The position numbers were made by a program, and so were the translations under genes. From Macrostomum lignano (taxonomy: Eukaryota): a stretch of DNA of 64,000 bases. This document shows, one piece after another, positions 1 through 62,825 of the stretch. Numbering within the stretch: the first letter of the stretch is position 1; the number at the start of each line of letters is the position of its first letter. The stretch covers positions 930,001 through 994,000 of the forward strand of contig NIVC01000056.1 in NCBI GenBank assembly GCA_002269645.1. The letters run 5' to 3'. The notes under the pieces were generated by a model. The model worked only from the letters and a program-made list of their open reading frames with translations. It did not search any database and was not told the origin of the DNA.

Positions 1-1290
1 CTTGCTGCAGTCTCAGTCACCGGTGCTTCTCCTTGCTACAGTCTCAGTCACCGGTGCTTTCTCCTTGCGGCAGTTTCAGTCACCGGTGCTTTCTCCTTGC
101 TGCAGTCTCAGTCACCAGTGCTTTCTCCTTGCTGCTGTCTCAGTCACCGGTGCTTTCTCCTTGCTGCTGTCTCAGTCACCGGTGCTTTCTCCTTGCTGCT
201 GTCTCAGTCACCGGTGCTTTCGCCTTGCTGCAGTCTCAGTAACCGGTGCTTTCTCCTTGCTGCAGTCTCAGTAACCGGTGCTTCTCCTTGCTGCAGTCTC
301 AGTAACCGGTGCTTCTCCTTGCTGCTGTCTCAGTCACCGGTGCTTTCTCCTTGCTGGTGTCTCAGTCACCGGTGCTTTCTCCTTGCTGCTGTCTCAGTCA
401 CCGGTGCTTTCTCCTTGCTGCTGTCTCAGTCACCGGTGCTTTCTCCTTGCTGCTGTCTCAGTCACCGGTGCTTTCTCCTTGCTGCTGTCTCAGTCACCGG
501 TGCTTTCTCCTTGCTGCTGTCTCAGTCACCGGTGCTTTCTCCTTGCTACTGTCTCAGTCACCGGTGCTTTCTCCTTGCTACTGTCTCAGTCACCGGTGCT
601 TTCTCCTTGCGGCAGTTTCAGTCACCGGTGCTTTCTCCTTGCTGCAGTCTCAGTCACCGGTGCTTTCTCCTTGCTGCAGTCTCAGTCACCGGTGCTTTCT
701 CCTTGCTGCAGTCTCAGTCACCGGTGCTTTCTCCTTGCTGCAGTCTCAGTCACCGGTGCTTTCTCCTTGCTACAGTTTCAGTCACCGGTGCTTTCTCCTT
801 GCTGCAGTCTCAGTCACCGGTGCTTTCTCCTTGCGGCAGTCTCAGTCACCGGTGCTTTCTCTTTGCTGCAGTCTCAGTCACCGGTGCTTTCTCCTTGCGG
901 CAGTCTCAGTCACCGGTGCTTTCTCCTTGCGGCAGTCTCAGTCACCGGTGCTTTCTCCTTGCGGCAGTCTCAGTCACCGGTGCTTTCTCCTTGCTGCAGT
1001 CTCAGTCACCGGTGCTTTCTCCCTGCTGCAGTCTCAGTCACCGGTGCTTTCTCCTTGCTACTGTCTCAGTCACCGGTGCTTTCTCCTTGCGGCAGTCTCA
1101 GTCACCGGTGCTTTCTCCTTGCTGCAGTCTCAGTCACCGGTGCTTTCTCCCTGCTGCAGTCTCAGTCACCGGTGCTTTCTCCTTGCTACTGTCTCAGTCA
1201 CCGGTGCTTTCTCCTTGCTGCAGTCTCAGTCACCGGTGCTTTCTCCTTGCTACTGTCTCAGTCACCGGTGCTTTCTCCTTGCTACTGACT
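1..1290. repeat. 32-bp minisatellite (CAGTCTCAGTCACCGGTGCTTTCTCCTTGCTG), ~40 copies, cut by window start
   Basis: Direct tandem repetition. The overlapping ORFs at 2-1394 all show 32-aa periodicity (three 32-bp units). Confidence 0.97.
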
Positions 1291-2456
1291 CAGTCGCAGC
1301 TGATGCAGACCTAAATTGGCAGTTTAACTTCCTCAGACTGCAGAGTCAGATAAAAATGCTGTTTACGATAGCTACAAGCGTAAATGGCTTTTAAGTGTAA
1401 CGCGCGTAGCTCTTATTTGCTTCTGCAAGCGCCCGCAGTTCTCGTGAATGTGCATACATTTATGTACAAACACGTGCAAATATGCGCAAAACTCTCGTAT
1501 ATGGAGGGGAAGACTACGTACAGAGGACGGAAAAGGGGGTAGAGAATGAAAAAAACACCTGCATTTTGATACGGATAGGAAGACAATTCATGCACGGCTA
1601 GGTAAGGACAGCAACTGTAGAATTCTATAATTGAAATTTTAATCTAATTTTACTTTCTAACCAAGGGTTTTCTAGATATTTAGTTAACTTTGGGTAGGTT
1701 CGAAATATATATATTCTGTGCTATTAAGTGCCTTCAGTCGTCGCCATGAATTCTGGACTGAAGCTCAACAGTTTTAACTGCGCATAGGTATTTATCCTTG
1801 TGTCAACTAACAATCGATTTCATCTTGTGAATAATTTTTATAACGTTTGCATTTCCCGATCTCCATTTCAATTTCTTCCACAACGGGATCGTACTACAAT
1901 ATAAAGCTGTCGTAGCGCAAGTTTGATCGTACGTCGAAACTTCTACACTGCGGAGATAGAAGCTAAGAACGATCTCAACATAGAACGGGCCCAATGTCTT
2001 TTCGCGAGATCAGGCATCCAAGCTCAACAGGATCATTCGTGCTTCATATCCGGAAGAAGTCAATGCACGTAAAACTTGCAAGTTTTGTTAGCAATCACTG
2101 CTTATGAGTACATGTGCATAAAAGATTGAATTAAAAATCGAAAGGCTAACACCTCTAGTTGTTGACACCTGTCAAATTCGTGTCTAATTGATAATCATAA
2201 CGTTTTCACGAGACGTTACCAGCCACAGTTTGGTCGTTGGCTACCAACTGTTTTGAGGGACACTGCAGGAACAACAATAAAAAAATGATTCACTTTAAAA
2301 AGTCGGTTTTGTTATTCCTGATTGCTTCGAATTCTTTAGATTTATTTGCTCAAAGTGATAAATAGCTACTATCTTCAATTGCAGGGGGTGTCAATGGAAG
2401 GAAGGATCCTAAGCATCAAATAAGTCAAGCATTTCAGAGTCATCGAGTTGGCAAAC

Positions 2457-3242
2457 TCAACGCGGTGTCATGATATGCCGGCCTCCGTCTACGGGAACGA
2501 TGGTGCCAGTGATGAAGCTCGCAGCATCCGAGGCTAGAAAGGCCACCACAGTGGCCACCTCCTCCGGTTGGCCGGCCCTGCCCAGAGCGTGCGTGGTCTT
2601 GGACCGCTCCAGGAAGGCGGCATAAGCTTCATCGGACATGCCCGATCGCTTGTGAATCTCCGTGACAATCACGCCAGGATTTACCGAGTTCACGCGAACA
2701 CCCTTAGACGCTAAGTCGAGCGCTGTACACCTGGTGAACTGGTCCAAAGAGGCTTTAGTCATGCAGTAGGTCATGACGTTTGGAAAAGCGCAATTACCAG
2801 CTACGGAGGACACGTTAACAACGCTGCCCCGACCGGAGGCGATCAGGTGCGGCACGGCGGCTTGAGTCAGCTCGATCGCTGTGTCAACATTCAATCGGCG
2901 AAGCCCTTCAGCAGCGCTAGGCGAATAAGTCTCGACGGTGTCGTTGATAAGAGCTCCAGCAGCGTTGACAAGAATGTGCAAGCGGCCGAACGCGTTGACG
3001 GCTGCTGGCACGACTTTGGCCAAATCAGCTGGTTGAAGCAGATCAGCGGAGAGAGTGGCTGCTGACCTGTCCGATCCGACCTGCTTGCAGGCGGCCAGAG
3101 TCTCGTCCAGAGCGGTCTGGCTGCGGCCGACCAGCAGGACTTGAGCGCCGAGGCGAACCAGCTGGACAGCCACTGCTCTACCGATGCCAGAACTGGCCCC
3201 GGTTACTGTGGCAACGCGATCGGTTAGGGATAGGGAGTCCAT
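2457..3242 (-). CDS. Classical short-chain dehydrogenase/reductase (FabG-like), intronless, 261 aa
   Basis: First ATG at 3242 (MDSLSLTDRVATV). Motifs: TGASSGIG Rossmann motif, LVNAAG, NVSS, catalytic YCMTK, VNSVNPG, and the C-terminal FITGTIVPVDGG. Confidence 0.93.
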   Translation of the reverse strand: MDSLSLTDRVATVTGASSGIGRAVAVQLVRLGAQVLLVGRSQTALDETLAACKQVGSDRSAATLSADLLQPADLAKVVPAAVNAFGRLHILVNAAGALINDTVETYSPSAAEGLRRLNVDTAIELTQAAVPHLIASGRGSVVNVSSVAGNCAFPNVMTYCMTKASLDQFTRCTALDLASKGVRVNSVNPGVIVTEIHKRSGMSDEAYAAFLERSKTTHALGRAGQPEEVATVVAFLASDAASFITGTIVPVDGGRHIMTPR

Positions 3243-3283
3243 GAATGAGGGAAGCGTATACTTGTACTTTTCAATGTGCGCTA

Positions 3284-3416
3284 GTTGCCATGGCAATACT
3301 GCTGAGGTGCCTATTCTAGAATCCCGAATTTGTAGACCAGAAACCAGCAGTCTAAAGACGATAAGGGGTCTAGAGATAACTCGGCCCGGATCAATCACGC
3401 TAGTTGCTATAGCAAC
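3284..3416. promoter_or_regulatory. Two RFX X-box-like palindromes upstream of the SDR gene
   Basis: GTTGCCATGGCAAT at 3284-3297 and the perfect palindrome GTTGCTATAGCAAC at 3403-3416. X-box consensus is GTHNYY-AT-RRNAAC. Confidence 0.5.
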
Positions 3417-3443
3417 AATACTAGGGAACCCCTTTTAGATTAC

Positions 3444-3794
3444 AGGCAGGGGCTGTATGCACCCTGGCGCACTTTAAGCGACATTGGCACACAACCGGCG
3501 AGAGGCATTACTTCCCATTCCGCCGACTCCCCTGAGCAGGCACACAAGCGCGCGGATACGTACGCAGTCAGACGCACAGGCACACACTCACACAGGAGTG
3601 TACAGCGGCCCTAACTTTATTTATCGTTAGGCATGTACACTTTACTGCGCCTTGGGGGTTGGCCCTTCAAAGGCGTTAATTGCACGAGCAGAGCAAAGCC
3701 GAGATTCCAATTGAGCCCCAAATTAATGTGACTGCACTTGGAATCGAGCCTGGGCCGCTGGGACATCAGAGCGCCACACTGGACCACTGGGCTC
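3444..3794 (-). mobile_element. tRNA-derived SINE, copy 1 (~350 bp)
   Basis: Highly similar to 48158-48515. The minus-strand 5' end has an A-box-like (T/G)AGCCCAGTGG and a B-box-like GGCTCGATTCC. Confidence 0.75.
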
Positions 3795-3938
3795 TACATG
3801 GATTAATAAATTAAAAAGGTAAAAAAGCATTTTCAATTCCATAATACCATAAACTGACTGTTACATATATATTTGAATCGGGTACAAGATTATTACTAAA
3901 AGCATGTCAGTTTAACAATTCCAAGTTGCAGGCATTTT

Positions 3939-5046
3939 TCATTGATTGTCTTCTTCGCTTTCTTCTTCATACTCTCCGTCATCACCTGACCCATCATCTG
4001 ACTCTCCCAGCCGGTGCCGGATCCAAGCCGAAGCCTGTGCGGCAGTCTCGAACCGTTCCGCCTGCAACAGTCGCAGAAACGTTCGCTTGTCCCGTTCGCG
4101 CAGCTGCTGCATCTCCGAGTCGAGGCTGGCAGCTGCGGCCGCTGCCGCTCCGGCTGACTGATTTGCCACCGATGGCGCCTCTGCCGGGGTCAGCTCTCGC
4201 TGCTGGGCGCACTTCTGACATTCGGCTCGTTCACGGGCGCAGCTCTGACACACCTAGGAGAGAGAGAGGAGATACCATAGAAAACTGGTCATTGTGCTAC
4301 TAGTGATAGTGCTACTAGTCATAGCTATAGAAACTGGTCATAGTGCAACTGTTAATACCCATAGAAACTGGTCATAGTGCAACTGGTCATACCCATAGAA
4401 AATGGTCATAGTGCTACTAGTCATAGCTATAGAAACTGGTCATAGTGCAACTGTTAATACCCATAGAAAATGGTCATAGTGCTACTAGTCATAGCTATAG
4501 AAACTGGTCGTAATGCTACTTGTTATACTCATAAAAACTGGTCATAGTGCTGCTTTTAATACCCATAGAAATTGGTCATACCCATAGAAACTGGTCATAG
4601 TGCTACTAGTCATGCCGATAGAAACAGGTCATAGTGCTACTAGTCATGCCCATAGAAACTGGTCATAGTGCTACTAGTCATGCCCATAAAAACTGGTCAT
4701 AGTGTGGAAGCTCATTCACTATACCGAAATAGATGACTAAATCAAAAGCTTGACAAGCAACCCATAAAATCCGTACACAAGTTCAACTCACAGTGAAATA
4801 AGCGCTCTGTATGCACCGTTTCTCGCAACGCACGCACTTCCTTGGCTGAGTAGGCAGCTTGTACTTTTTATACTTCACCTTCCAGTCTAAAATATCTTTG
4901 CAGCGCTGACAGGTGAGGCCGCCAAAATTCAGTTGATTGACAGTTTTTGTACGCTGAGAAGTGTCATGGATGCTGTTCTTGAATGCATGACTATTCTGGT
5001 GTTTCTGAGGCCTATTTCGATTGGCGTTGCCCCGTTGCGAGCTCAT
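3939..5046 (-). CDS. C9orf85: C9orf85 homolog (DUF2039 Cys-rich protein), 2 exons, 189 aa
   Basis: Exons 5046-4792 and 4253-3939, with donor GTGAGT and acceptor CTCCTAG in phase 0. MSSQRGN..RPQKHQN, CQRCKDILDWKVKYKKYK, CVRC and the spliced VCQSC..ECQKC match the family. Confidence 0.92.
4276..4705. repeat. ~33-bp degenerate minisatellite (ATAGAAACTGGTCATAGTGCTACTAGTC..) in the C9orf85 intron
   Basis: Direct tandem repetition. Confidence 0.9.
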
Positions 5047-5194
5047 GGCTGTAAGATGTACATGTAGTTAAAGTCAGTGCGTGAAGTGCTTTGACCTTTT
5101 ACATTTATGACTTCTAATATGAGATAGCTAGTATGCATACTAGACGAATGGTTTGTAATTATAGGTTCCTACCATGAGGTTCATGCTGATGGCG

Positions 5195-6740
5195 GCGGTT
5201 AGATATATAGGTTGGTTGCTATGGTGTGATTGCTATGGTGCAGTTGCTATGGTGTGATTGCTATGGTGCAGTTGCTATGGTGTGATTGCTATGGTGCAGT
5301 TGCTATGGTGTGATTGCTATGGTGCAGTTGCTATGGTGCGGTTGCTATTGTGTGGTTTCTATAGGTTGGTTGCTATGGTGTGATTGCTATGGTGCAGTTG
5401 CTATGGTGCGGTTGCTATTGTGTGGTTTCTATAGGTTGGTTGCTATGGTGTGATTGCTATGGTGCAGTTGCTATGGTGTGATTGCTATGGTGCAGTTGCT
5501 ATGGTGTGATTGCTATGGTGCAGTTGCTATGGTGCGGTTGCTGTAGGTTTGGTTGTTATGGTGTGGTTGCTATGGTGCGGTTGCTATGGTGTAGTTTTTA
5601 TAGGTTGGTTGCTATGGTGGTGCCTATGGTGGTTGCTATAGGTTGGTAGCTATGGTGGTTGCTATGGTGCGGTTGCTAAGGTGTGGTTTATACAGGTTGG
5701 TTGCTATGGTGTGGTTGCTGTAGGTTTGGTTGTTATGGTGTGGTTGCTATGGTGCGATTGCTATGGTGTAGTTTTTGTAGGTTGGGTGCTATGGTGTGGT
5801 TGCTATGGTGCGGTTGTTATGGTGCGGTTGCTATGGTGTGTCTTTTATAAGTTGGTTGCTATAGTATGGTTGCTATGGTGTGGTTGCTATGGTGTTGTTG
5901 CTATGGTGCATTTGCTATGGTGTGGTTGCTATGGTGCGGTTGCAATGGATTGGTTGCTATGGTGTGGTTTGCTGTAGGTTTGGTTGTTATGGTGTGGTTG
6001 CTATGGTGCGGTTGCTATGGTGTACTTTTTATAGGTTGGGTGCTATGGTGTGGTTGCTATGGTGCGGTTGTTATGGTGCGGTGGCTATGGTGTGGCTTTT
6101 ATAAGTTGGTTGCTATAGTGTGGTTGCTATGGTGTGGTTGCTATGGTGTTGTTGCTATGGTGCGGTTGCTATGGTGTGGTTGCTATGGTGCGGTTGCTAT
6201 GGTGTGTCTTTTATAAGTTGGTTGCTATAGTATGGTTGCTATGGTGTGGTTGCTATGGTGTTGTTGCCATGGTGCATTTGCTATGGTGTGGTTGCTATGG
6301 TGCGGTTGCTATGGATTGGTTGCTATGGTGTGGTTTGCTGTAGGTTTGGTTGTTATGGTGTGGTTGCTATGGTGCGGTTGCTATGGTGTAGTTTTTATAG
6401 GTTGGGTGCTATGGTGTGGTTGCTATGGTGCGGTTGTTATGGTGCGGTGGCTATGGTGTGGCTTTTATAAGTTGGTTGCTATAGTGTGGTTGCTATGGTG
6501 TGGTTGCTATGGTGTTGTTGCTATGGTGCGGTTGCTATGGTGTGGTTGCTATGGTGCGGTTGCTATGGATTGGTTGCTATGGTGTGGTTGCTATGGTGTG
6601 GTTGCTATGGTGCGGTTGTTATGGTGCGGTTGCTATGGTGTGGCTTTTATAGGTTGGTTGCTATAGTGTGGTTGCTATGGTGTGGTTGCTATGGATTGGT
6701 TGCTATGGTGTGGTTGCTATAGTGTTGTTGCTATGGATGG
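5195..6740. repeat. ~14-bp minisatellite (GGTTGCTATGGTGT variants) with a ~366-bp higher-order block duplication
   Basis: Tandem units. The blocks starting at 5866 and 6232 are near-identical, as seen in the duplicated spurious ORFs. Confidence 0.95.
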
Positions 6741-7000: not shown

Positions 7001-7642
7001 TCAGTCCCAGGCATCGCTAATTACAGGATCAGCCGGTGAAAGCCTCAACTGTCCCCACTCCGCCTCGTTGACATCCGAGTCCCTGAGGGCACCCGACAGC
7101 AGAATCCAGCGAGAGAAACAGCCAACATCAATTGGTCTCAATCGAGTCCAGCGCGGTTTCAAATGCTCGCAAGTGTGATCGGGCAGTCGACAGTCCGAGC
7201 TCAGCTCCGTAGCCCATAGCAACGAGACAAATCCCAGATTTAACCGTCTCAATTGTTGAGCATCTGTCAATTGGCACAGTCGGTTAATAAACTCAGCGCA
7301 TCGGGGACTTCTAACCGATGGGGATAATTGTCCCAACTGTAGGCTGCACTGTCGCAACTGATTAGTGTAATCCCCGTAGCTTGGATTGTTTCGCCAAGCC
7401 ACAATGCCTAATGAGGCCACAAACAGGTAAGCCAGAGTTTTACGCGGTGCAGACTCCATGTCGGCCAGGGCTTCCGCGGCAGCTTGTCGGTAATCTACTA
7501 GAAGCCGGCGCAGATAAGAGGACAGATTCGAATACTGACGATGCCAGAAATTTGCTTTCAACTTTTCCTGCTGCTGGGTCTCTAAGGCTGCCGTGCAAAG
7601 TCGGCGAATGAGAACGAGTCGAGCCATAGAGATGATTGGCAT
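7001..7642 (-). CDS. TIMM29: Mitochondrial import inner membrane translocase subunit Tim29 homolog, intronless
   Basis: LLVDYRQAAAEA, a TM segment (TLAYLFVASLGIVAW), RRLNLGFVSL, C.HLKPRWT, DVGCFSRW.L...RDSDVNE.EW match Tim29. First ATG at 7642, alternative at 7627. Confidence 0.88.
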   Translation of the reverse strand: MPIISMARLVLIRRLCTAALETQQQEKLKANFWHRQYSNLSSYLRRLLVDYRQAAAEALADMESAPRKTLAYLFVASLGIVAWRNNPSYGDYTNQLRQCSLQLGQLSPSVRSPRCAEFINRLCQLTDAQQLRRLNLGFVSLLWATELSSDCRLPDHTCEHLKPRWTRLRPIDVGCFSRWILLSGALRDSDVNEAEWGQLRLSPADPVISDAWD

Positions 7643-12991: not shown

Positions 12992-13149
12992 GCCAAGCTG
13001 CACTGCTGATGGATGGCTTGCTTGATTGACAACTTTCTACTGAGCTGCTGCTCGCTGTGGGAGTGCGTTTTTGTAGAAGACTTGATATTGATTCTTTGAT
13101 TGCTCAAGTAAAGTTCATAGTAGAGATGAGAAAAATAACAATTTTCTAG

Positions 13150-14009: not shown

Positions 14010-16324
14010 TCAACGAGAAGGATGCTCAATTCGCCACTGCAGCAGAGCCGCATTGAATTCCTCAACCGCGCCCAGAACATCGTCTATGGTAGTATCCGGT
14101 CCAACGCTCAGCCTAACAGCTGATCTGGCAGCCATAGGATTGACGCCAGATTCTAACAGAACAGCGGATGCGCCGGAATTGGCGGCGGCGTGACAAGCTG
14201 AACCGGCGCTGGCAAGAATGCGGCCTCTACTAAGTAGATAGTTCCTAGCTAAAGCAGCTTCGCGCAGTTCCATATCGTCAGTATTATTATCAGTTGCTAA
14301 TTCTTTACTCTGACCAGCTGATTGCAATAGTTTTGTTGATACAACTGACACGTTGAGCGTGTTTGGCAGAGTGGGACCGTTTGGAAAATTATTGTTCACG
14401 ATTAGTCGAAAGCCGGTGAATTCTGACATCTCCGGATCGTTAATGGAGTTCAGCTGCGTGAAATGTTAGGGAAAATTATAGCATTTAAAGATAATCTAGA
14501 ATTGAAGCGGTTATTTAATTATCTAGCTACTAGAATCAAACCGATTATTGAGATATCTAGCCATTGGAATCAGAGCGATTATTGAGATATCTAGATATCT
14601 AGCCATCGGATTGGAATCAAAGTGACGTTATGACTATTGAGATATCTAGCCATTGGAATTGAAGCTTTTATTGAGCGACTGACATATTACTGGGATATCG
14701 AATTGACTTTCGGTGGTTTCGAAGGAGGAATGACACACAGAGGAAATCCAATTCAACACCCAGAATTACCAGTCTATCCCGCAGCTGATCTCGAATCTCA
14801 GCCAGCTGTACCATCAGAGGCTGTCTGCCATCAACATCATCCAACTGAGTCTTCGACAGACGCGCGGCTGCCCCCAGACCGGCAAGTCCCGGTGTATTCT
14901 CAGTGCCAGCCCTGACGCCATTCTCCTGTCCGCCGCCAAGCAGCAGTGGCGCCAATTTAGCGCGCAATCTAGCGCTACAATACAGCGCCCCAACACCTTT
15001 GGGTCCTTGAAATTTATGACCAGCCAAGCTTAGGAGATCTAATCCATTGGGAACTTTGACAGGCACTTTGCCGACAGCTTGACAAGCGTCAGTGTGGAAC
15101 AATGGCAGGCCAGAGTTGGCATAGGAGGAACACGACGAATCGACTGTCAGGCTATTTAGGCGACGCCATTCCGAGAGCGCATTTGCAATCTGCGAAATTA
15201 TTTGTTCGCGTGATTTTTTCAACTAAGTGTGTGCGATGTTGAGTTCTTTAACGGACGTCTTAGTTCAAGTCTTTAAATCATGGGGTCGGCAATTTTTTTA
15301 CCTTAGGGGCCAGATAAAGAATCCAGCTCATGGCCGCGGGCCTAGTGAGAAAGGAAAGGAGAAGGAAGAGAGGAGAGGGGAGAGACTAAAGACTAGAGAT
15401 AAGAGATGAAAGGGGAGAGAGAAGATGAGATGAGAGATGAGTTGGGAGATGACAGGAGAGAATATAAGAGGAGCGAGGAAATTAGGAAGATGAGGCGGGA
15501 GAAGAGGACTCGAGGACTAACCGGCTGCGATTAAGGATGGGGTGCTTTCCCAAGACCTAAATTTCACATCACAGAAAAGTTTTAAGCCTCATAATTTAGG
15601 TATTGTTTCTTCTTGTTTTCTGCTTTTTTCATAATTGGCATGTTGATTTGATTTTTGGCGACTTTTGAAATTTACGCATTATATGAAACCTCCCTTAAGT
15701 GTCAAGCGAGGCACTTAAAAGTTGTTTTTACAGACACTTTTTGTAGACATCACTGGTTTATACCTCGGCTATGGGAAATATGGCCCCAGTCTCATTATTT
15801 GCCCACATCACGGTCACTAAACAGGTATTGCGCCAGCGCAATGCAGCAACGAGATCGCCAACATTTGCCAGAGCGCCAGTGCTTGAGTCGATGCGCAACC
15901 AGGTTACATCAACTAAACCTAGAGCCAACAGTCGTTCAATAGGTTTACGAATCGAGTCGTGTTCAATACAGCTGGCTACAATATGAGGCCGACCAACAAT
16001 AGCATTCTCAGCTCTATCCAAATTCCGGTACATCCAAACAGCCTGTTTCACAGCCCAATTATTGCTCTCTGTACCGCCGGATGTGAAAATCAACTCTGCT
16101 GGCTGACAGCCAATCAGATCTGCTACAGATTTGCGAGCAACTTCAACTATGCTGCGAGTCCGACTGCAAACGCTCGGATTCTGCCAGCCGGTGTACATAG
16201 CTTCAATAACGGCATCGCGAGACTGCGAAGACATTGGACTAGTAGCATTGTAGTCTAAATAAATTGGCGTCTTCGTTGCTTCTTGCTTGTGTTGTTGACT
16301 ACGAGGCAGCTGTTGATGCGACAT
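14010..16324 (-). CDS. SCLY: Selenocysteine lyase (class V PLP enzyme), 3 exons, 474 aa
   Basis: Exons 16324-15764, 15189-14770 and 14453-14010, all phase 0. Motifs: [23 protein letters not shown] (SCLY-type HDS), NNETG, HTDACQ, GHKF (PLP Lys), GTENTP, catalytic SAGSACH, RLSVG. Confidence 0.9.
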
Positions 16325-16779
16325 TTGGCTGAATATAAAAATTTACATTGACAATTGACGATTCATAAAATTTACCACTTGTAATTGACTACTAAGGTAC
16401 CTTGAAATTATGAATGTGTACTTTACCTACAGTCCGTGTTATTGCAACATTGGCTAGGGTAGGGTGGAGGCAGCTAAATACTAAGACAGTATAAATATTA
16501 AATATCAAGAGAACCTATGCCGGAGCCATTCAAGGAAAGGTCATGATGGTCAGCTGTCTCCCTAGTGAAAATTGAAGGGCCTCGTGTGCCATGGGAAAAT
16601 CTTGTTAATCCAACAAAAAAAGCAAAACACAATCCGATTTAAATGGACCTCTTTCATACTAACACTACAACACTAATTTTACTTGAAAGCGCGTATGAAT
16701 CTTAGTAAATGAACACAAATTTAAAATGCTTTAGTAAAATAAGTTATTTCACTTCTTCCTCGATAAATTTTCTTTCGCA

Positions 16780-18019
16780 TTAATAATTGCAAACAACATC
16801 AACGCGATAGTAAGGCTCTAGTACTTTACGCAGACTGGCAATTAACTCAGTCTGAATGAGCTCCACCTGTTCAGTTGGGCAGTAATCGTCTAGAGACGAT
16901 CTGGCAATGGTGACGCAAGCAGGAGGACCGTATCGAGCTGACAACTCACTCAACCAATTGCCAAAACTGTCAATCATCAGGCGAATCTCGTCTGGCGAAG
17001 ACTCGATGCGGTAGCTCGCCACCAAGACCGTCTTGACCGCTGAGTACTTCGTGTAAATCTTCTGGCGTCCATGTTGTAGCAGTAGCAGTAGCGCTACTAT
17101 CGCCGTTTCCATGACGACGAGCCCACGCGAACAGAGAACGAAGAGCAGTTCGATCTTGAGCATCATCCTTCTCGGCGTCATCAACTTCATCAACGTTGAT
17201 AGCCTCGCTACTCGTACTAGCTTCAGTTTTACTATCCAATTCACTGGAAACTTCCATCATGATTTGACCCAACCGCTCCAAGCGTTGCTCCCTTCGCCTG
17301 CAAGCCGTCTCAAGAGCCGGGCCCTCTTCGACAATTTCGCCACCGCGCCAGCCGTAGACGCTACGAGCGGCGCTAATCAGATCAGCTGGTAGCCACTTCG
17401 ACGGAGCGTCCTGCGTAGAGAAATAGTCCAAGTCAACATCGACAACGTAAGCGGCAGCCTGACCGAGACCCGATTGGCCGACACAATCGCAATCCAGTGC
17501 ACTGCTAAACTCGTGCGAGCACAGGTGAAATTGGCTAATCTTATTACTATTCTTGCCTATCTCTGCTTCGGGTATGGAGGTCAAATGGTGACAGTACATA
17601 CACTCGGCCGCAAAATAAGGCAAGCCGCAGTCTAAACGTAAAGGTGCTTCAACAGCAGCAGCGGCTGACGATTCAACTGGACAAGGACCAATACGAACTA
17701 GACGACGCTTTATATCCGGCAGCTGGTCCGACCAAGGCGGTCGCAGCCAAACAACGCTATCAAAGTGGCCAGCATAGGCAGCTGGCAGAATCCAACTCCC
17801 AATACTAAGTTGCGATTGCAACGCGCCATCAACTCCAGCGTCGAGGCAATCGTTGGCTGTTAACTTAGGCGGCAACTGCAGATCAGGATGCGAGTTCAGG
17901 TGCAACAGTGTTAAAAGAGAAAACGGCAAACGCTTTGAACCGATTAAACGGTAGATATCCAATAGCACCTCGTCGTGCGGCTCGCGAATGAACACGCGTA
18001 TTGGTTGGCGTTGCTTGAC
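16780..18019 (-). CDS. C5orf22: UPF0489/C5orf22 homolog with a frameshift near 17000 and no genomic ATG (possible pseudo-allele or assembly error)
   Basis: One frame has HDEVL.DIYRLIGSKRLP, HLNSHPDL, WILPAAYAGHF and VDLDYFST up to ELPHRV. The C-terminal VTIARSSLDDYCP..QV is in another frame ending at 16780. Starts at acceptor TTTCAG|GTC (18019). Confidence 0.85.
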
Positions 18020-18098
18020 CTGAAAGATGTTGTAAAAAACTTGGTTTATTTCTGCAAATAGCACAATATATCTGCTTTTAGAACAAAACAAAGGATCT

Positions 18099-18886
18099 CA
18101 TAGGCGTAGGAACGGGGGGGGCCAGTGGGGCCATGCCCCCCCCCCTACTTTTTAAAATGGGAGGGGGCAGTAATGGTATCTGTCCCCTCCACATTTTAAA
18201 TGTAAAATGTAGACTTATTTTTAGTTTTTGCTGCTTTGCATGAATGCATTTTGCTGCAGGGCGACAAAACATAGCGCCTGGAGCGCCGAAATGAGTGCCT
18301 GCAGCACCAAAATGAGCGCCTGCAGCGCCAAAATGAGTGCCTGCGGCGCCAAGATGAGTGCCTGCGGCGCTAAAATGAGTGCCTGCGGCGCTTAAATGAG
18401 TGCCTGCGGCGCTAAAATGAGTGTCTGCGGAGCTAAAATGAGTGCCTGCGTCGCAAAAATGAGTGCCTGCGGCGCCAAAATGAGTGCCTGCGGCGCCAAG
18501 ATGAGTGCCTGCGGAGCCAAAATGAGTGCCTGCGGCGCCAAGATCAGTGCCTGCGGCGCTAAAATGAGTGCCTGCAGCGCTAAAATGAGTGCCTGCGGAG
18601 TTAAAATGAGTGCCTGCGGCGCTAAAATGAGTGCCTGCGGAGCTAAAATAAGTGCCTGCGGCGCTAAAATGAGTGCCTGCGGAGCTAAAATGAGTACCTG
18701 CGGCGCTAAAATGAGTACCTGCGGCGCTTTATAAAATGAGTGCTGACAAGATGGATTCTGAAAATAATCGGTGCATGATAATGTGCATTTTCCATATAAA
18801 AAATCTAACTCAACGGGGGCGTGCACCCTAAATCCGTCACTGAACCTGCCCCTCTCCCCACTTTTTGAAATGTTCCTACGCCTATG
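18099..18886. mobile_element. hAT-like MITE (788 bp) carrying an internal 21-bp minisatellite
   Basis: Perfect 15-bp TIRs CATAGGCGTAGGAAC (18099-18113) and GTTCCTACGCCTATG (18872-18886). Degenerate 8-bp TSD AAGGATCT/AAGGAATT. Confidence 0.85.
18270..18745. repeat. 21-bp minisatellite (AAAATGAGTGCCTGCGGCGCT) inside the MITE
   Basis: About 22 tandem units. Confidence 0.95.
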
Positions 18887-19174
18887 AAGGAATTCTATAT
18901 CAATTTTTTAAGCTCGATGAAAAATTAGTGAGAAATACAATTATGATCTATTATGAGCATGTATGTCGTTTTTTTATTTTCTTCACAGATGAGCAGCAAT
19001 GAAAACAGTTTGATGAAAACTATTATTAGTAAACACTGTATGATTTTATGTAGTCAGACTCAACTATCAAATGTGCTATTTACTACAGATCAAATGAAGT
19101 TACAAAACATTTAGCATGTTTCCGTTAAAAACCCACGAAACAACACGAAGTTCCTCAGATCCATAAAGTTTCAC

Positions 19175-19648
19175 TTATTCCTTCTTCTCCTCCTGAGCAG
19201 CCAGCAAAGCGGACTTGATACCAATCTTCTTCAACTCCTCAATCAATTCGCCATTTTGATGCATTTTAATCAGCACATCGCAGCCGCCGATGAACTCGCC
19301 ATTAAAGTACACCTGAGGAATAGTTGGCCAATCGCTAAACGTTTTAATATCCTGTCTCAGCTCCTCATTGTCGAGAACGTTGTGCGCGGAATACACGTCC
19401 GGTTTTAAGCCGTGAAATTCGAGAATTTTAATAACGGCATTGGAGAAACCGCAACGTGGCTCCTCCGGCACGCCTTTCATAAAGACGACAACCTTGTTGG
19501 CTTTGACCATTTCGGCTATTTTATTGTGCATAGAACCGGCGGTGCTGGAAGTCGATAGCGATGACGTAAGCAGTGAAGACAGGGTTGGCGATAGCTTACA
19601 TTGACGCAGCGAAGCTGTCGTATTGACTAGGCAGCGTAAATTAAACAT
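19175..19648 (-). CDS. GLRX5: Monothiol glutaredoxin 5, mitochondrial, intronless, 157 aa
   Basis: Ser/Arg-rich presequence, VVVFMKG..E.PRCGFS active site, [17 protein letters not shown]. Confidence 0.96.
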
Positions 19649-20129
19649 GCTGATTGCAAAGTTCTGAAATGAGTGTGTACGAGCATCTCAAGTGACTTAA
19701 GTAGACAAAGTGCAATAAGTTGACAAAGTGTAACAGTGTGCCCTCAGTCAGATTGAAAACTAGAAGTCATGCGCAAACGTGTTTTTGGACAAAGATCAGT
19801 TAATCTAAGCCAAAACAAAATTAGGCGAGCCCTAAAAATTCGGTTGCGAGCATCTAAACCAAGAAGTCAGAATGATTGCGAAAGCCGGAAAGTCCAAGAA
19901 GAGATCGCCAACACAGGCGACCGTCAAATTCTGCGAAATATTGACTATCGAATAGGCATTCTGACAATTCTTGCGTTGACGCAATTCGCTTCCGCGTTTT
20001 CAAGGCTCCGCCATTTCTGCGTCAGACTTTGCGCTTCATCATCATTCTGAGGACTAATTATTATTCTGAGTTTGTTTGAGCACTGACCTCGCTACCTGGC
20101 AAGAGTACAACTTGGCTATTTTCCAGGGT

Positions 20130-23100
20130 TTCGTGGTGATTCTACCAGGTGAAGTGGTGATTCTACCAGGTGAATTGGTGATTCTACTAGGTGAAGTGGT
20201 GATTCTACCAGTGAAGTGGTGATTCGACCAGGTGAAGTGGTGATTCTACCAGGTGAAGTAGTGATTCTTTCAGATGAAGTGGTGATTCTACCAGGTGAAG
20301 TTGTGGTGATTCTACCAGCTGAAGTGGTGATTATACGAGGTGAAGTGGTGATTCTACGAGGTGAAGTGGTGATTCTTTCAGGTAAATTGGTGAATCTACC
20401 AGATAAAGTGGTGATCCTACCGGGTAAAGTGGTGATCCTACCGGGTAAAGTGGTGATCCTACCGGGTAAAGTGGTGATCCTACCGGGTAAAGTGGTGATC
20501 CTACCAGGTAAAGTGGTGATCCTACCAGGTAAAGTGGCGATCCTACCGGGTAAAGTGGTGATCCTACCAGGTAAAGTGGTGATCCTACCAGGTAAAGTGG
20601 TGATCCTACTAGGTAAAGTGGTGATCCTAGCAGGTAAAGTGGTGATCCTACCAGGTAAAGTGGTGATCCTACTAGGTAAAGTGGTGATCCTAGCAGGTAA
20701 AGTAGTGATCCTACCAGGTAAAGTGGTGATCCTACCGGGTAAATTGGTGATCCTACCGGGTAAAGTGGTGATCCTACCGGGTAAAGTGGTGATCCTAGCA
20801 GGTAAAGTGGTGATCCTACCGGGTAAAGTGATGATCCTACCAGGTAAAGTGGTGATCCTACCGGGTAAAGTGGTGATCCTAGCAGGTAAAGTGGTGATCC
20901 TACCAGGTAAAGTGGTGATCCTAGCAGGTAAAGTGGTGATCCTACCAGGTAAAGTGGTGATCCTACTAGGTAAAGTGGTGATCCTAGCAGGTAAAGTAGT
21001 GATCCTACCGGGTAAAGTGGTGATCCTACCGGGTAAAGTGGTGATCCTAGCAGGTAAAGTGGTGATCCTACCGGGTAAAGTGATGATCCTACCAGGTAAA
21101 GTGGTGATCCTACCGGGTAAAGTGGTGATCCTACCAGGTAAAGTGGTGATTCTACCAGGTGAAGTAGTGATTCTTTCAGATGAAGTGGTGATTCTACCAG
21201 GTGAAGTTGTGGTGATTCTACCAGCTGAAGTGGTGATTATACGAGGTGAAGTGGTGATTCTACGAGGTGAAGTGGTGATTCTTTCAGGTAAATTGGTGAA
21301 TCTACCAGATAAAGTGGTGATCCTACCGGGTAAAGTGGTGATCCTACCGGGTAAAGTGGTGATCCTACCGGGTAAAGTGGTGATCCTACCAGGTAAAGTG
21401 GTGATCCTACCAGGTAAAGTGGCGATCCTACCGGGTAAAGTGGTGATCCTACCAGGTAAAGTGGTGATCCTACCAGGTAAAGTGGTGATCCTACTAGGTA
21501 AAGTGGTGATCCTAGCAGGTAAAGTGGTGATCCTACCAGGTAAAGTGGTGATCCTACTAGGTAAAGTGGTGATCCTAGCAGGTAAAGTAGTGATCCTACC
21601 AGGTAAAGTGGTGATCCTACCGGGTAAATTGGTGATCCTACCGGGTAAAGTGGTGATCCTACCGGGTAAAGTGGTGATCCTAGCAGGTAAAGTGGTGATC
21701 CTACCGGGTAAAGTGATGATCCTACCAGGTAAAGTGGTGATCCTACCGGGTAAAGTGGTGATCCTAGCAGGTAAAGTGGTGATCCTACCAGGTAAAGTGG
21801 TGATCCTAGCAGGTAAAGTGGTGATCCTACTAGGTAAAGTGGTGATCCTACTAGGTAAAGTGGTGATCCTAGCAGGTAAAGTAGTGATCCTACCGGGTAA
21901 AGTGGTGATCCTACCGGGTAAAGTGGTGATCCTAGCAGGTAAATTGGTGATCCTACCAGGTAAAGTGGTGATCCTACCGGGTAAATTGGTGATCCTACCG
22001 GGTAAAGTGGTGATCCTACCGGGTAAAGTGGTGATCCTAGCAGGTAAAGTGGTGATCCTACCGGGTAAAGTGATGATCCTACCAGGTAAAGTGGTGATCC
22101 TACCGGGTAAAGTGGTGATCCTACCAGGTAAAGTGGTGATTCTACCAGGTGAAGTAGTGATTCTTTCAGATGAAGTGGTGATTCTACCAGGTGAAGTTGT
22201 GGTGATTCTACCAGCTGAAGTGGTGATTATACGAGGTGAAGTGGTGATTCTACGAGGTGAAGTGGTGATTCTTTCAGGTAAATTGGTGAATCTACCAGAT
22301 AAAGTGGTGATCCTACCGGGTAAAGTGGTGATCCTACCGGGTAAAGTGGTGATCCTACCGGGTAAAGTGGTGATCCTACCAGGTAAAGTGGTGATCCTAC
22401 CAGGTAAAGTGGCGATCCTACCGGGTAAAGTGGTGATCCTACCAGGTAAAGTGGTGATCCTACCAGGTAAAGTGGTGATCCTACTAGGTAAAGTGGTGAT
22501 CCTAGCAGGTAAAGTGGTGATCCTACCAGGTAAAGTGGTGATCCTACTAGGTAAAGTGGTGATCCTAGCAGGTAAAGTAGTGATCCTACCGGGTAAATTG
22601 GTGATCCTACCGGGTAAAGTGGTGATCCTACCGGGTAAAGTGGTGATCCTAGCAGGTAAAGTGGTGATCCTACCGGGTAAAGTGATGATCCTAGCAGGTA
22701 AAGTGGTGATCCTACCGGGTAAAGTGATGATCCTACCAGGTAAAGTGGTGATCCTACCGGGTAAAGTGGTGATCCTAGCAGGTAAAGTGGTGATCCTAGC
22801 AGGTAAAGTGGTGATCCTAGCAGGTAAAGTGGTGATCCTAGCAGGTAAAGTGGTGATCCTACCGGGTAAAGTGGTGATCCTACCGGGTAAAGTGGTGATC
22901 CTAGCAGGTAAAGTGGTGATCCTACCGGGTAAAGTGATGATCCTACCAGGTAAAGTGATGATCCTACCAGGTAAAGTGGTGATCCTACCGGGTAAAGTGG
23001 TGATCCTAGCAGGTAAAGTGGTGATCCTAGCAGGTAAAGTGGTGATCCTACCGGGTAAAGTGGTGATCCTAGCAGGTAAAGTGGTGATCCTACTAGGTAA

Positions 23101-23345
23101 AGTGGTGATCCTACCAGGTAAAGTGGCGATCCTACCGGGTAAAGTGGTGATCCTACCAGGTAAAGTGGTGATCCTACCAGGTAAAGTGGTGATCCTACTA
23201 GGTAAAGTGGTGATCCTAGCAGGTAAAGTGGTGATCCTACCAGGTAAAGTGGTGATCCTACTAGGTAAAGTGGTGATCCTAGCAGGTAAAGTGGTGATCC
23301 TACTAGGTAAAGTGGTGATCCTACCAGGTAAAGTGGTGATTTCTC
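20130..23345. repeat. 21-bp minisatellite (GGTAAAGTGGTGATCCTACCA), ~150 copies, with a higher-order ~0.9-1 kb triplication
   Basis: The marker variant CTTTCAGATGAAG plus a 3-bp insertion recurs at ~20271, 21177 and 22167 (periods 906 and 990 bp). Confidence 0.97.
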
Positions 23346-23869
23346 AGGAAAAAAGGCCATTATTCAGGGTCAATTAATAGGATTTATTAACTTTCCTGGG
23401 TAAAGGGTCGAATCTTTAGGATGAAGGGGTGATTCTTCCTAAAGGAGTTAATAAGGGAATTTTTTAGGGGCAGGTCGTTTTTAGTAGGTGTCGACATCCA
23501 CATATACTAGTTAGCTAATTTAATTGTAAAAAGAGTCAATTGAAAAAATCTGGGTTAAATCAAATCATCATCGTGCAGAAGAAATGCAGTTAAACACCAT
23601 ATAGTACAAATGAGAACATGTACTTTTAAAATACAACATACATAAATACTGTATTACCTACGCGCATATTAAAACTTAATTAAGCCAGAATTTAAAAGTG
23701 TAGCAATCAGCATAGGAACAAAGATTGACTCTTATTATTACACCATTGTATCGTGTAGACGAATAACATTTCGTCACTATGGTAACAAAAGTACACACTT
23801 ACAATGGGATTAACACGGTTACTACTGTATAATAAAGCAACAAGTTCCAAGCAAACAGACGCGCAACAG

Positions 23870-61552: not shown

Positions 61553-62215
61553 ATGAGAATCGCCCTCTCTGCAACATGAGAATCGCCCTCTCTGCAACAT
61601 GAGAATCGCCCTCTCTGCAACATGAGAATCGCCCTCTCTGCACCATGAGAATCGCCCTCTCTGCAACATGAGAATCGCCCTCTCTGCAACATGAGAATCG
61701 CCCTCTCTGCACCATGAGAATCGCCCTCTCTGCAACATGAGAATCGCCCTCTCTGCAACATGAGAATCGCCCTCTCTGCAACATGAGAATTGCCAACTCT
61801 GCAACATGAGAATCGCCCTCTCTGCAACATGAGAATCGCCCTCTCTGCACCATGAGAATCGCCAACTCTGCAACATGAGAATTGCCCTCTCTGCAACATG
61901 AGAATTGCCAACTCTGCAACATGAGAATCGCCCTCTCTGCAACATGAGAATCGCCCTCTCTGCAACATGAGAATTGCCAACTCTGCAACATGAGAATCGC
62001 CCCCTCAGCAACATGAGAATCGCCCTCTCTGCAACATGAGAATTGCCCTCTCTGCAACATGAGAATCGCCAACTCTGCAACATGAGAATCGCCCTCTCTG
62101 CAACATGAGAATCGCCCTCTCTGCAACATGAGAATCGCCCTCTCTGCAACATGAGAATCGCCCTCTCTGCAACATGAGAATTGCCCTCTCTGCAACATGA
62201 GAATTGCCCTCTGCA
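61553..62215. repeat. 23-bp minisatellite (GAGAATCGCCCTCTCTGCAACAT)
   Basis: Direct repetition. Confidence 0.96.
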
Positions 62216-62825
62216 CAGAAAATGTCATAACTATGCGTATGTGTGTCTGCATTACCAATTGGGAAATCAAATCTGTACTGTGCTCACTTCTCAAGCCTGT
62301 GCAGCCGTCGGTTGCTATTTCCTGGAAATCTGATTCTGGCATCCTTCTTGCACGTTGCTCTTAGTCAGTCTCGCGCGACGGGCAATATAAGAAGAATAAA
62401 ACAAATTCCTAGTTACCAGTGCCATTGCCTTTGATATATCATAATATTCGAATCTATTATAATTTCCAATTATATAAGGATTGTATAGGAAGCCATGTGA
62501 CTTGACATGCAAGCAAATCCAGATCTGCTATGACAGGCGACATGCTTCACAGGAAACTGATCATTTATCAACTTTCTTTTCTGGCTTTCTCCTTTGTTTA
62601 GATTTTAGTATTGAAGCGAGTTGAGTTTTTAGTATGGTTCGAATTGATGAGCTGCGGCGTCTCAGGAAGTAACGTTGATAGGCAGCCAATTTCCAACCTC
62701 TGAGCATGAGCACACGCGCTCAAGCAGGGTGCACAATGGTATGAGCTGTACACGCTTTTCGAAAGTTACTCCTCAATATTTTGGCCGCTTGATGTACTTA
62801 TTGTTAGAGTAACCGTTGCTTGTTA

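What the first reader, a model, noticed from the sequence alone, without database searches (positions are those of the whole stretch)
18010..18030. C5orf22 has no genomic start codon; a phase-0 acceptor would be completed by the SL's terminal AUG
Seen: the conserved frame has no ATG upstream of the homologous N-terminus. It begins at TTTTTTACAACATCTTTCAG|GTC AAG CAA (AG at 18021-18020). Adding AUG gives MVKQRQPIRVFIREPHDEVL, matching where the family's N-terminal motif starts. Only ~360 bp of non-MITE DNA separates it from the GLRX5 stop, and I found no convincing ATG-plus-phase-0-donor exon there. Known: platyhelminth SL exons end in AUG, which has been shown to act as initiator in Schistosoma. 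Inference: this ORF is translatable only after trans-splicing.
Basis: partly seen in the sequence, partly recalled or inferred. Interest (0 to 1): 0.8.

Follow-up and report, generated by a model that had tools for sequence, protein, structure and literature searches.

The report
Spliced leader supplies gene's start codon
In the flatworm Macrostomum lignano, a conserved enzyme-like gene (C5orf22/UPF0489) has no start codon of its own and almost certainly borrows the AUG at the end of the trans-spliced leader RNA, a mechanism already well known in flatworms, so this is one more ordinary example.

Summary
The window is Macrostomum lignano Mlig_3_7 contig NIVC01000056.1. On the minus strand, TTTCAG|GTCAAGCAA (AG at 18021-18020) opens the UPF0489/C5orf22 frame. 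An in-frame TGA lies 27 codons upstream, and the next in-frame ATG is 140 codons downstream.

- The M. lignano spliced leader (SL) ends in ATG.
- The site matches the published trans-splice acceptor motif [T/C]TNCAG.
- On the intact paralogue (contig c895) the deposited "partial" CDS starts exactly at this AG|G.
- No upstream ATG exon with a GT[G/A]AG donor exists.
- The Pfam domain starts 9 residues after the junction.
- A third copy (c32) carries SL-derived bases written over the acceptors of this operon. The assembly was Pilon-polished with RNA-seq. GLRX5 shows TTCAG>GCATG, SCLY shows CAG>ATG and this gene shows CAG>CTG.

No reads were available, so neither the junction nor initiation at the SL AUG is shown directly.

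Two caveats apply. The window copy looks defective: a 2-nt deletion near 17002 truncates it, and an invariant motif Asp is Asn. Initiation from the SL AUG has been documented in flatworms since 2006 and is acknowledged for Macrostomum.

Verdict: a real feature, a new member of a known kind, of low interest.

The parts
18020..18025 (-). Trans-splice acceptor TTTCAG. The AG is at 18021-18020 and the junction lies between 18020 and 18019, in phase 0 with the ORF.
   Evidence: Sequence. It matches the M. lignano SL acceptor motif [T/C]TNCAG (PMC8629364). The c895 paralogue's deposited CDS starts at the next base. The c32 paralogue has CAG>CTG here, matching the T of the SL's terminal ATG.
16970..18019 (-). 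UPF0489/C5orf22 reading frame as assembled in the window: 349 sense codons with no initiator, ending at a premature TGA caused by a frameshift.
   Evidence: Pfam PF12640, E 1.3e-35 on the intact paralogue. The family profile matches PDB 8brp_A, a peptide arginase, with E 3e-23.
17002..17003 (-). Site of a 2-nt (TC) deletion relative to both paralogues: GAGTCTCTTCG becomes GAGTCTTCG. It shifts the frame and removes the C-terminal ~75 residues.
16780..17001 (-). Remainder of the C5orf22 coding sequence (SSPDEIRLMID...ARSSLDDYCP...VVCNY, then stop). It is out of frame in the window copy.
   Evidence: ORF 16780..17244.
17894..17896 (-). Codon 42 after the junction is AAC (Asn) in the window but GAC (Asp) in both paralogues. 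It lies in the motif H-x-D-x-H-P-D.
   Evidence: Asp was found in 172 of 174 family proteins and the column is invariant in a 30-sequence alignment.
18098..18100 (-). In-frame TGA that closes the frame 27 codons upstream of the junction.
18098..18887 (.). MITE-like insertion in the GLRX5-C5orf22 spacer (the outron, the stretch removed by trans-splicing). It has 16-nt perfect terminal inverted repeats enclosing 21 copies of a 21-nt tandem repeat.
   Evidence: It is present in all three paralogous loci with different array lengths.
19175..19648 (-). Upstream gene of the same-strand cluster: GLRX5-like glutaredoxin with its own ATG. Its acceptor is TTTCAG with the G at 19664. The SL AUG would be in frame 5 codons upstream ([10 protein letters not shown]...).
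   Evidence: c32 has TTCAG>GCATG at this acceptor.
15758..16329 (-). Downstream gene: acceptor (ATTCAG, with the G at 16329) and first exon of a selenocysteine-lyase-like class-V aminotransferase with its own ATG at 16324. The SL AUG is out of frame and would open a 10-codon ORF overlapping the real start.
   Evidence: c32 has CAG>ATG at this acceptor.
18045..18050 (-). AATAAA hexamer 24 nt upstream of the acceptor. A second one lies at 18973-18978. Both are candidate poly(A) signals for GLRX5.
   Evidence: This is a motif match only and was not tested.

Best explanation
The C5orf22/UPF0489 gene of Macrostomum lignano sits in a same-strand cluster, GLRX5 > C5orf22 > selenocysteine-lyase-like > RPF2, that is probably transcribed as an operon. 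Its coding sequence starts directly at a 3' splice site. The pre-mRNA upstream of TTTCAG| (the outron, which includes a MITE) is removed by SL trans-splicing. The 35-nt leader, which ends ...UUGCAUG, is joined to GUCAAGCAA. The leader's terminal AUG then lies in phase 0, is the first AUG of the mRNA (nt 33-35), and serves as initiator, giving MVKQRQPIRVFIREPH.... Without trans-splicing there is no usable start.

Shown here: the sequence anatomy, the motif match, the reading phase, the lack of alternative starts, the fit to the family N-terminus, and the architecture shared by all three genomic copies.

Inferred: that the SL is actually joined at this AG (indirect evidence only), and that ribosomes initiate on the SL AUG (by analogy with Schistosoma and Echinococcus).

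The copy in this window probably yields a defective product, because a 2-nt deletion truncates it and an invariant Asp in the H-x-D-x-H-P-D motif is Asn. The intact copy is on contig NIVC01000895.1.
For: - Organism and contig.
- The SL sequence ends in ATG, and the acceptor motif is [T/C]TNCAG: PMC8629364.
- Sequence and frame.
- The deposited 'partial' protein PAA75225.1 on c895 starts VKQRQ at the first exon base. On the same contig the GLRX5 and SCLY models also start at or 1 nt after their acceptors. The annotators placed mRNA 5' ends at SL-read peaks (PMC5730564).
- The assembly was polished with Pilon using RNA-seq (PMC5730564). On c32 the bases before the acceptors are converted towards the SL 3' end: GLRX5 TTCAG>GCATG, SCLY CAG>ATG, C5orf22 CAG>CTG.
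- The chance of 7 or more of 12 SL-directed changes is below 1e-9.
- No ATG exon with a GT[G/A]AG donor exists in the 1155-nt spacer.
- The alternative upstream acceptor TTGCAG|AAATAA would give M-K-stop.
- In the mature mRNA the next AUGs (nt 226 and 280) are out of frame, with ORFs of 39 and 21 codons. The next in-frame AUG is codon 142.
- Pfam domain position 1 aligns to residue 9. The solved homologue 8brp_A aligns from its residue 3. Family N-termini cluster at this position.
- The transcriptional-unit names Mlig033541.g1 and .g3 imply that the annotators placed C5orf22 and RPF2 in one transcriptional unit, and g3 is flagged TRANSSPLICED.
- The SL AUG is an established initiator in flatworms (Cheng et al. 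2006, cited in PMC9851317 and PMC12582326; also PMC3510090). It is acknowledged as a start codon for Macrostomum (PMC10468722).
Against: - No RNA-seq read, EST or cDNA spanning SL|GTCAAG could be inspected. The protein database holds no transcript-derived copy of this protein.
- The SL imprint at this particular acceptor is a single base (A>T at -2). A blind scan found a similar single-base change at 13919 with no gene behind it, so on its own this base is weak evidence (targeted p of about 0.005-0.01).
- The gene model on the window contig starts 6 nt further in, at CAA after GTCAAG. Use of the second in-frame AG, or simple 5' truncation of the model, cannot be told apart.
- Two of the three copies carry frameshifts. 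Nonsynonymous-to-synonymous counts between copies (7:2, 6:6, 7:4) show no clear purifying selection.
- About 35% of M. lignano donor sites lack GT[G/A]AG (PMC8629364), so a weak cis donor is not strictly excluded.
Confidence: 0.8

Rival explanations
1. A cis-spliced upstream exon, lying in the 1155-nt spacer or further upstream, supplies the ATG and is joined to the same acceptor. The gene would then be conventionally initiated.
For: Ten ATG-to-GT phase-0 candidates exist in the spacer. One example is ATG at 18101 (MRSF) with donor TTT|GTTTTG at 18090, which would make a 70-nt intron. Roughly a third of M. lignano donor sites do not match GT[G/A]AG (PMC8629364).
Against: None of the candidates has the consensus donor. 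The only short-intron candidate takes its ATG from the MITE's inverted repeat. The deposited model on c895 is 5'-partial and starts at the acceptor rather than at an upstream exon. c32 carries an SL-type base at position -2.
Confidence: 0.05
2. Translation starts at the internal AUG (MYCHH, codon 142), as annotated for the c32 copy (PAA93214.1). The upstream 140 codons would then be 5' UTR.
For: PAA93214.1 is deposited as a complete 273-aa protein starting at this Met.
Against: That model follows from a 1-nt deletion in c32 that breaks the upstream frame. The skipped region holds most of the PF12640 domain (residues 9-200) and invariant His/Asp residues. It aligns to residues 3 onwards of peptide arginase 8brp_A. 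Two out-of-frame AUGs precede codon 142 in the mRNA.
Confidence: 0.03
3. The window copy is a decaying duplicate (a pseudogene or null allele), so the question of its start codon has no functional consequence for this locus. This is compatible with the best explanation for the gene family as a whole.
For: A 2-nt deletion at about 17002 gives a premature stop and removes the conserved C-terminal ARSSxDDYCP region. Asp is replaced by Asn at a residue that is Asp in 172 of 174 relatives. Substitution ratios between copies look near neutral. M. lignano DV1 is a hidden polyploid with many redundant copies (PMC10468722; PMC5730564).
Against: The deletion lies in a TCTC dinucleotide run in a PacBio-based assembly reported to have only about 64% error-free bases (PMC5730564), so it may be an assembly error. 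The missing ATG is shared with the intact copy, so it is not a product of decay.
Confidence: 0.45
4. The SL is joined at the second in-frame AG, 6 nt downstream (GTCAAG|CAA). This would give MQRQPIRVF... instead of, or as well as, MVKQRQ....
For: The gene model on the window contig starts at CAA, window 18013. This AG is also in phase 0.
Against: GGTCAAG does not match [T/C]TNCAG. All three models on this contig begin at irregular offsets from their acceptors (+21, +6, +28), which points to 5'-truncated models rather than real junctions. The c895 model and the changed base in c32 both point to CAG|GTC.
Confidence: 0.1

Closest known systems
Flatworm SL 3'-terminal AUG used as initiator methionine (Cheng, Cohen, Ndegwa & Davis 2006, J Biol Chem 281:733; Schistosoma mansoni and S. 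japonicum; extended to Echinococcus granulosus in PMC3510090)
   Same: The SL ends in AUG. The acceptor is in phase 0 with a conserved ORF. There is no genomic in-frame AUG at the conserved N-terminus. The gene is a conserved housekeeping-type gene.
   Different: This case is in a free-living macrostomorph rather than a neodermatan parasite. No cDNA or translation experiment is available for this gene. I could not read the 2006 paper itself and know it only as cited in PMC9851317, PMC12582326 and PMC3510090.
M. lignano SL trans-splicing and operons (Wudarski et al. 2017, PMC5730564; Ustyantsev & Berezikov 2021, PMC8629364)
   Same: Same organism and same assembly. The acceptor motif is [T/C]TNCAG. 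Neighbouring genes are on the same strand. The repeat-adjusted intergenic distance is 365 nt, below their 1-kb operon threshold, and the spacer contains a repeat insertion as they describe.
   Different: In the text I searched, those papers do not discuss genes that depend on the SL AUG for initiation. PMC10468722 only remarks that the Macrostomum SL probably contains the start-codon ATG.
slORFs, open reading frames created by SL addition (slORFfinder, PMC9851317)
   Same: The start codon is donated by the leader and is in frame with the main ORF.
   Different: Here the SL-created ORF is the only way to make the conserved protein. It is not an alternative or extra ORF.
UPF0489 / C5orf22 / MESR6 family (Pfam PF12640), related to peptide arginase (PDB 8brp)
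   Same: The domain is matched along its full profile length. The invariant His/Asp motifs are present in the intact paralogue. The N-terminus falls at the family mode.
   Different: The window copy has Asn in place of the invariant motif Asp and a frameshifted C-terminus. No start codon is encoded in the genome.

Membership tests
SL-AUG-initiated flatworm mRNAs | The species' spliced leader ends in AUG immediately before its donor site. | tested here: met
   The M. lignano SL is CGGTCTCTTACTGCGAAGACTCAATTTATTGCATG, followed by GTAAG in the SL RNA gene (PMC8629364). The organism was identified.
SL-AUG-initiated flatworm mRNAs | The acceptor is in phase 0 with the conserved ORF, so that AUG plus the exon reads the protein. 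| tested here: met
   ATG+GTCAAG... translates to MVKQRQPIRVFIREPHDEVLL, continuous with the PF12640 domain.
SL-AUG-initiated flatworm mRNAs | No genomic in-frame AUG is available at or upstream of the conserved N-terminus. | tested here: met
   TGA lies 27 codons upstream with no ATG between it and the junction. The next in-frame ATG is 140 codons downstream. No ATG exon with a consensus donor exists. The same holds in both paralogues.
SL-AUG-initiated flatworm mRNAs | The SL is actually joined at this AG in mature mRNA. | tested here: inconclusive
   The support is indirect. The deposited 5'-partial CDS on c895 starts at the junction. The acceptor motif matches. c32 has the SL-type T at -2, alongside clear SL imprints at the two neighbouring acceptors. 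No reads or cDNAs were accessible.
SL-AUG-initiated flatworm mRNAs | Ribosomes initiate on the SL AUG. | not testable with these tools
   This needs Ribo-seq, N-terminal proteomics or a reporter assay. For now it is inferred from the SL AUG being the first AUG, with G at +4, and from the two following AUGs being out of frame.
UPF0489 / C5orf22 (PF12640) | A Pfam match above the gathering score that covers the whole profile. | tested here: met
   123.7 bits against a cut-off of 27, profile positions 1-167 of 167, on the intact paralogue P0005. 467 relatives were found at E<=1e-3, and named hits are UPF0489 protein C5orf22 homolog or MESR6.
UPF0489 / C5orf22 (PF12640) | The invariant H-x-D-x-H-P-D motif and the C-terminal ARSSxDDYCP region are intact in the window copy. 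| tested here: not met
   The window has HLNSHPD, with Asn where 172 of 174 relatives have Asp. The C-terminal region is out of frame after the 2-nt deletion. Both features are intact in the c895 paralogue.
M. lignano operon (criteria of Ustyantsev & Berezikov 2021) | Adjacent genes lie on the same strand, the repeat-adjusted spacer is under 1 kb, and the downstream gene is SL trans-spliced. | tested here: met
   GLRX5, C5orf22, SCLY and RPF2 are all on the minus strand. The spacer is 1155 nt, and subtracting the 790-nt MITE leaves 365 nt. The trans-splicing of the downstream gene is inferred as described above. The annotators put C5orf22 (g1) and RPF2 (g3) in one transcriptional unit, Mlig033541.

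The most novel reading that the evidence does not exclude
Obligate dependence on the SL's terminal AUG is fixed for a conserved metazoan gene in Macrostomorpha, which to my knowledge is the earliest-branching rhabditophoran lineage. All three genomic copies share it. This would extend obligate SL-AUG initiation, shown experimentally only in parasitic Neodermata, to the base of the group. It would support the idea that the universally conserved flatworm SL AUG is kept because a set of genes has lost its own start codon, making their translation strictly gated by trans-splicing. As a by-product, the SL bases that RNA-seq polishing wrote into the Mlig_3_7 assembly could be mined genome-wide as a map of trans-splice junctions.
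Probability: 0.6. Interest if true: 0.35.

Novelty: new member of a known kind. Interest (0 to 1): 0.25.

Why it matters
For biology, this is one more concrete case, in a free-living model flatworm, of a conserved gene that cannot be translated without SL trans-splicing. It is useful as a test locus, since M. lignano is transgenic-tractable, but it does not change the picture established in 2006.

For annotation, it explains why the deposited M. lignano proteins of this gene are "partial" or start at an internal Met. Gene finders for flatworms need to allow SL-AUG starts.

The more practical point is a caution. The Mlig_3_7 reference carries SL-derived bases written over true acceptor sites. 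This destroys AG dinucleotides and even creates false genomic ATGs, for example CAG>ATG in front of SCLY on contig NIVC01000032.1. Such changes could mislead studies of splice sites or start codons.

Tried and rejected
- **Rfam scan of the window.** No hits. No SL RNA gene and no SL 15- or 20-mers occur in the window.
- **Search for SL 3'-end imprints within the window itself.** Matches of 6-9 nt occur at about the chance rate and none precedes a gene. The imprint is visible only by comparing paralogues.
- **Search for transcript-derived copies of the protein.** The 90% cluster holds only three NCBI genome-derived proteins, with no Logan or ENA transcript contigs, so there is no direct SL-junction evidence.
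- **Supplement look-ups for the gene IDs.** Only the RPF2 gene of the same transcriptional unit is listed, flagged TRANSSPLICED. C5orf22 is not in the stored part of the tables.
- **Search for flatworm orthologues, to ask whether SL dependence is conserved.** The closest named relatives are arthropods, molluscs and chordates. No platyhelminth appears in the lists shown, so this question stays open.
- **Substitution ratios between the three copies.** There are too few differences to be informative.
- **Window-wide scan for further [T/C]TNCAG|ORF cases without an ATG.** Apart from this gene, only tandem-repeat pseudo-ORFs turned up.
- **Cheng et al. 2006 could not be read.** It is cited only through papers that describe it.
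- **Rejected: the c32 changes as natural mutations or a retrocopy.** c32 keeps the outrons and the MITE, and all changes are directed towards the SL sequence.

Full report
**Where the window comes from.** The protein encoded at the site is found on NCBI assembly GCA_002269645.1, contig NIVC01000056.1. [quoted passage not shown] The gene lies on the minus strand, in a same-strand run of four genes:
- a GLRX5-like glutaredoxin (19648-19175);
- the UPF0489/C5orf22 gene (from 18019);
- a selenocysteine-lyase-like class-V aminotransferase, here called SCLY (first exon 16324-15758);
- an RPF2/Brix gene (ATG at 12991).

**The observation.** The minus strand reads aagttttttacaacatctttcag|GTCAAGCAACGCC, with the AG at 18021-18020 and G of GTC at 18019.
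- Upstream in this frame are 26 sense codons with no ATG, preceded by TGA at 18100-18098.
- Downstream, the first in-frame ATG is 140 codons on, at MYCHH.
- Prepending ATG gives MVKQRQPIRVFIREPHDEVLL.
- Pfam PF12640 (UPF0489) aligns from its profile position 1 to residue 9 after the junction.
- A profile of the family matches the solved peptide arginase 8brp_A from chain residue 3.
- Among 141 M-starting family representatives from an exhaustive HMMER search, 61 begin within 5 residues of the proposed Met, and the median offset is +6.

The spacer to the GLRX5 stop is 1155 nt. Of this, 790 nt are a MITE with 16-nt perfect inverted ends (18098-18113 and 18872-18887) and a 21 x 21-nt tandem array. 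That leaves 365 nt of other DNA.

**Is the SL really the source of the AUG?** The M. lignano leader is CGGTCTCTTACTGCGAAGACTCAATTTATTGCATG, and the top motif at its acceptors is [T/C]TNCAG (PMC8629364). TTTCAG fits this motif.

Ten ATG-to-GT phase-0 candidate exons lie in the spacer, and none has the species' GT[G/A]AG donor. The other good acceptor nearby, TTGCAG|AAATAA 32 nt upstream, would give Met-Lys-stop.

In the reconstructed mRNA the SL AUG (nt 33-35, with G at +4) is the first AUG. The next two, at nt 226 and 280, are out of frame and open ORFs of 39 and 21 codons. The next in-frame AUG is codon 142, beyond most of the conserved domain.

**Evidence from the two paralogous copies.** Both copies were retrieved: NIVC01000895.1 (c895, locus L002) and NIVC01000032.1 (c32, locus L003). 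All three share the same acceptor region and the same lack of an ATG.

On c895 the deposited protein PAA75225.1 is labelled "partial" and starts VKQRQ, at the first base after the AG. On the same contig the GLRX5 model starts at its acceptor (NFAISMFNL...), and the SCLY model starts one base after its acceptor. The annotators state that mRNA 5' ends were set from peaks of SL-containing reads (PMC5730564). These model starts are therefore second-hand records of SL junctions.

**An accidental record in the assembly.** On c32 the bases just before the acceptors differ from the other two copies, and always towards the SL's 3' end:
- GLRX5: catTTCAG|AAC becomes catGCATG|AAC;
- SCLY: attCAG|CC becomes attATG|CC;
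- C5orf22: ttCAG|GTC becomes ttCTG|GTC.

The assembly paper says the Canu assembly was polished with Pilon using Illumina DNA and RNA-seq mapped by STAR (PMC5730564). SL-bearing reads forced across the junction would produce exactly this pattern. The last SL bases are covered by the most reads, so the imprint would be partial for weakly expressed genes.

The chance of 7 or more of 12 SL-directed substitutions at these three sites is below 1e-9 at 2-6% divergence.

I am cautious about the single base at the C5orf22 site. As a test of a site named in advance its chance probability is about 0.005-0.01. However, a blind scan of about 250 AG sites also flagged a lone A>T at 13919 with no gene behind it, and one similar hit turned up among about 850 AG sites scanned (in two overlapping scans) in the c895 control. 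The strength lies in the concordance. At both neighbouring genes the clear imprints coincide with the c895 model starts, and the same holds for the single base here. A further CAG>CTG sits upstream of RPF2 at 13055. The c895 copy of RPF2 is flagged TRANSSPLICED in a published table.

**State of the window copy.** Relative to both paralogues, the window has a 2-nt deletion (GAGTCTCTTCG becomes GAGTCTTCG, about 17002). This shifts the frame, gives a stop at 16970, and removes about 75 C-terminal residues. That lost region includes the part that aligns to residues 234-292 of 8brp_A.

The window also has Asn for Asp in H-x-D-x-H-P-D. That position is Asp in 172 of 174 relatives and invariant in a 30-sequence alignment. 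From general knowledge of arginase-fold enzymes, this motif resembles the metal-binding DAHxD motif. That resemblance is my inference and was not tested.

c32 has its own 1-nt deletion, which explains why its deposited protein starts at the internal Met. Only c895 is intact, at 413 codons plus the SL Met. Whether these indels are real or are errors of a PacBio-based assembly cannot be decided here.

**Comparison with what is known.** The mechanism is established. Every reported flatworm SL ends in AUG. Cheng et al. 2006 showed it can act as initiator, with more than 40 S. mansoni cDNAs needing it (as described in PMC9851317 and PMC12582326). [quoted passage not shown] A Macrostomum genome paper already refers to the SL's final ATG as a translation start codon (PMC10468722). 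I found no paper that names this gene, or that lists SL-AUG-dependent genes in M. lignano.

**A small illustration in one cluster.** The same leader has three different consequences for three adjacent genes:
- an in-frame 5-codon extension on GLRX5 ([10 protein letters not shown]);
- the obligatory initiator on C5orf22;
- an out-of-frame 10-codon ORF overlapping the real start of SCLY ([10 protein letters not shown]-stop).

**Verdict.** The feature is a new member of a known kind. Interest is low, about 0.25. The most useful by-product is the caution about SL bases in the reference assembly.

Noticed in passing
L003 (NIVC01000032.1): about 496-500, 5580 and 7272-7273. Equivalent window sites are 19668-19664, 18021 and 16331-16330.: The reference assembly carries SL-derived bases written over true trans-splice acceptors (TTCAG>GCATG, CAG>CTG, CAG>ATG). 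This is almost certainly an artefact of Pilon polishing with RNA-seq. It destroys AG acceptors and creates false genomic ATGs, but it also marks SL junctions.
   Followed up: yes
Window about 17002-17003 and 17894-17896 (minus strand).: The window's C5orf22 copy has a 2-nt TC deletion that causes a frameshift and a stop at 16970. It also has Asn in place of the family-invariant Asp of H-x-D-x-H-P-D. It is either a decaying duplicate or an assembly error.
   Followed up: partly
L003:5843 (NIVC01000032.1).: A 1-nt deletion in the N-terminal coding region of the c32 copy explains why its deposited protein (PAA93214.1) starts at the internal Met, codon 142.
   Followed up: partly
Window 19664-19646 and 16329-16290 (minus strand).: The SL AUG would be in frame 5 codons upstream of the GLRX5 ATG. 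It would be out of frame for SCLY, opening a 10-codon ORF that overlaps the real start. One leader thus has three different translational outcomes within one gene cluster.
   Followed up: partly
Window 18098-18887, L002 about 3650-5760, L003 about 1450-5330.: The MITE-like element in the outron holds a 21-nt tandem array whose length differs greatly between copies. The GLRX5-C5orf22 spacers are about 1.15, 2.8 and 4.6 kb. This fits the published remark that repeats inflate intergenic distances within M. lignano operons.
   Followed up: partly
Window 13055 and 13919 (minus strand).: Two further lone A>T changes at position -2 of AG sites in c32. The one at 13055 (CCCACAG|CGAGCAG) lies 64 nt upstream of the RPF2 ATG, a gene flagged TRANSSPLICED in a published table. 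The one at 13919 has no ORF behind it and is probably a chance SNP, which makes it a useful false-positive control.
   Followed up: partly
L001 gene models at 1372, 3001 and 4714 (window 19642, 18013, 16300).: The gene models recorded for the window contig start 21, 6 and 28 nt after their acceptors, at non-ATG codons. On c895 the models start at the acceptors. The window-contig models are probably 5'-truncated, but the cause was not established.
   Followed up: no
Window 20216-23377 (+), 100-1300 (+) and 61700-62320 (-).: Long tandem arrays give very long repeat 'ORFs', for example about 1050 codons of GKVVILP-type 7-residue repeats. They look like satellite or tandem-repeat DNA rather than genes.
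   Followed up: no
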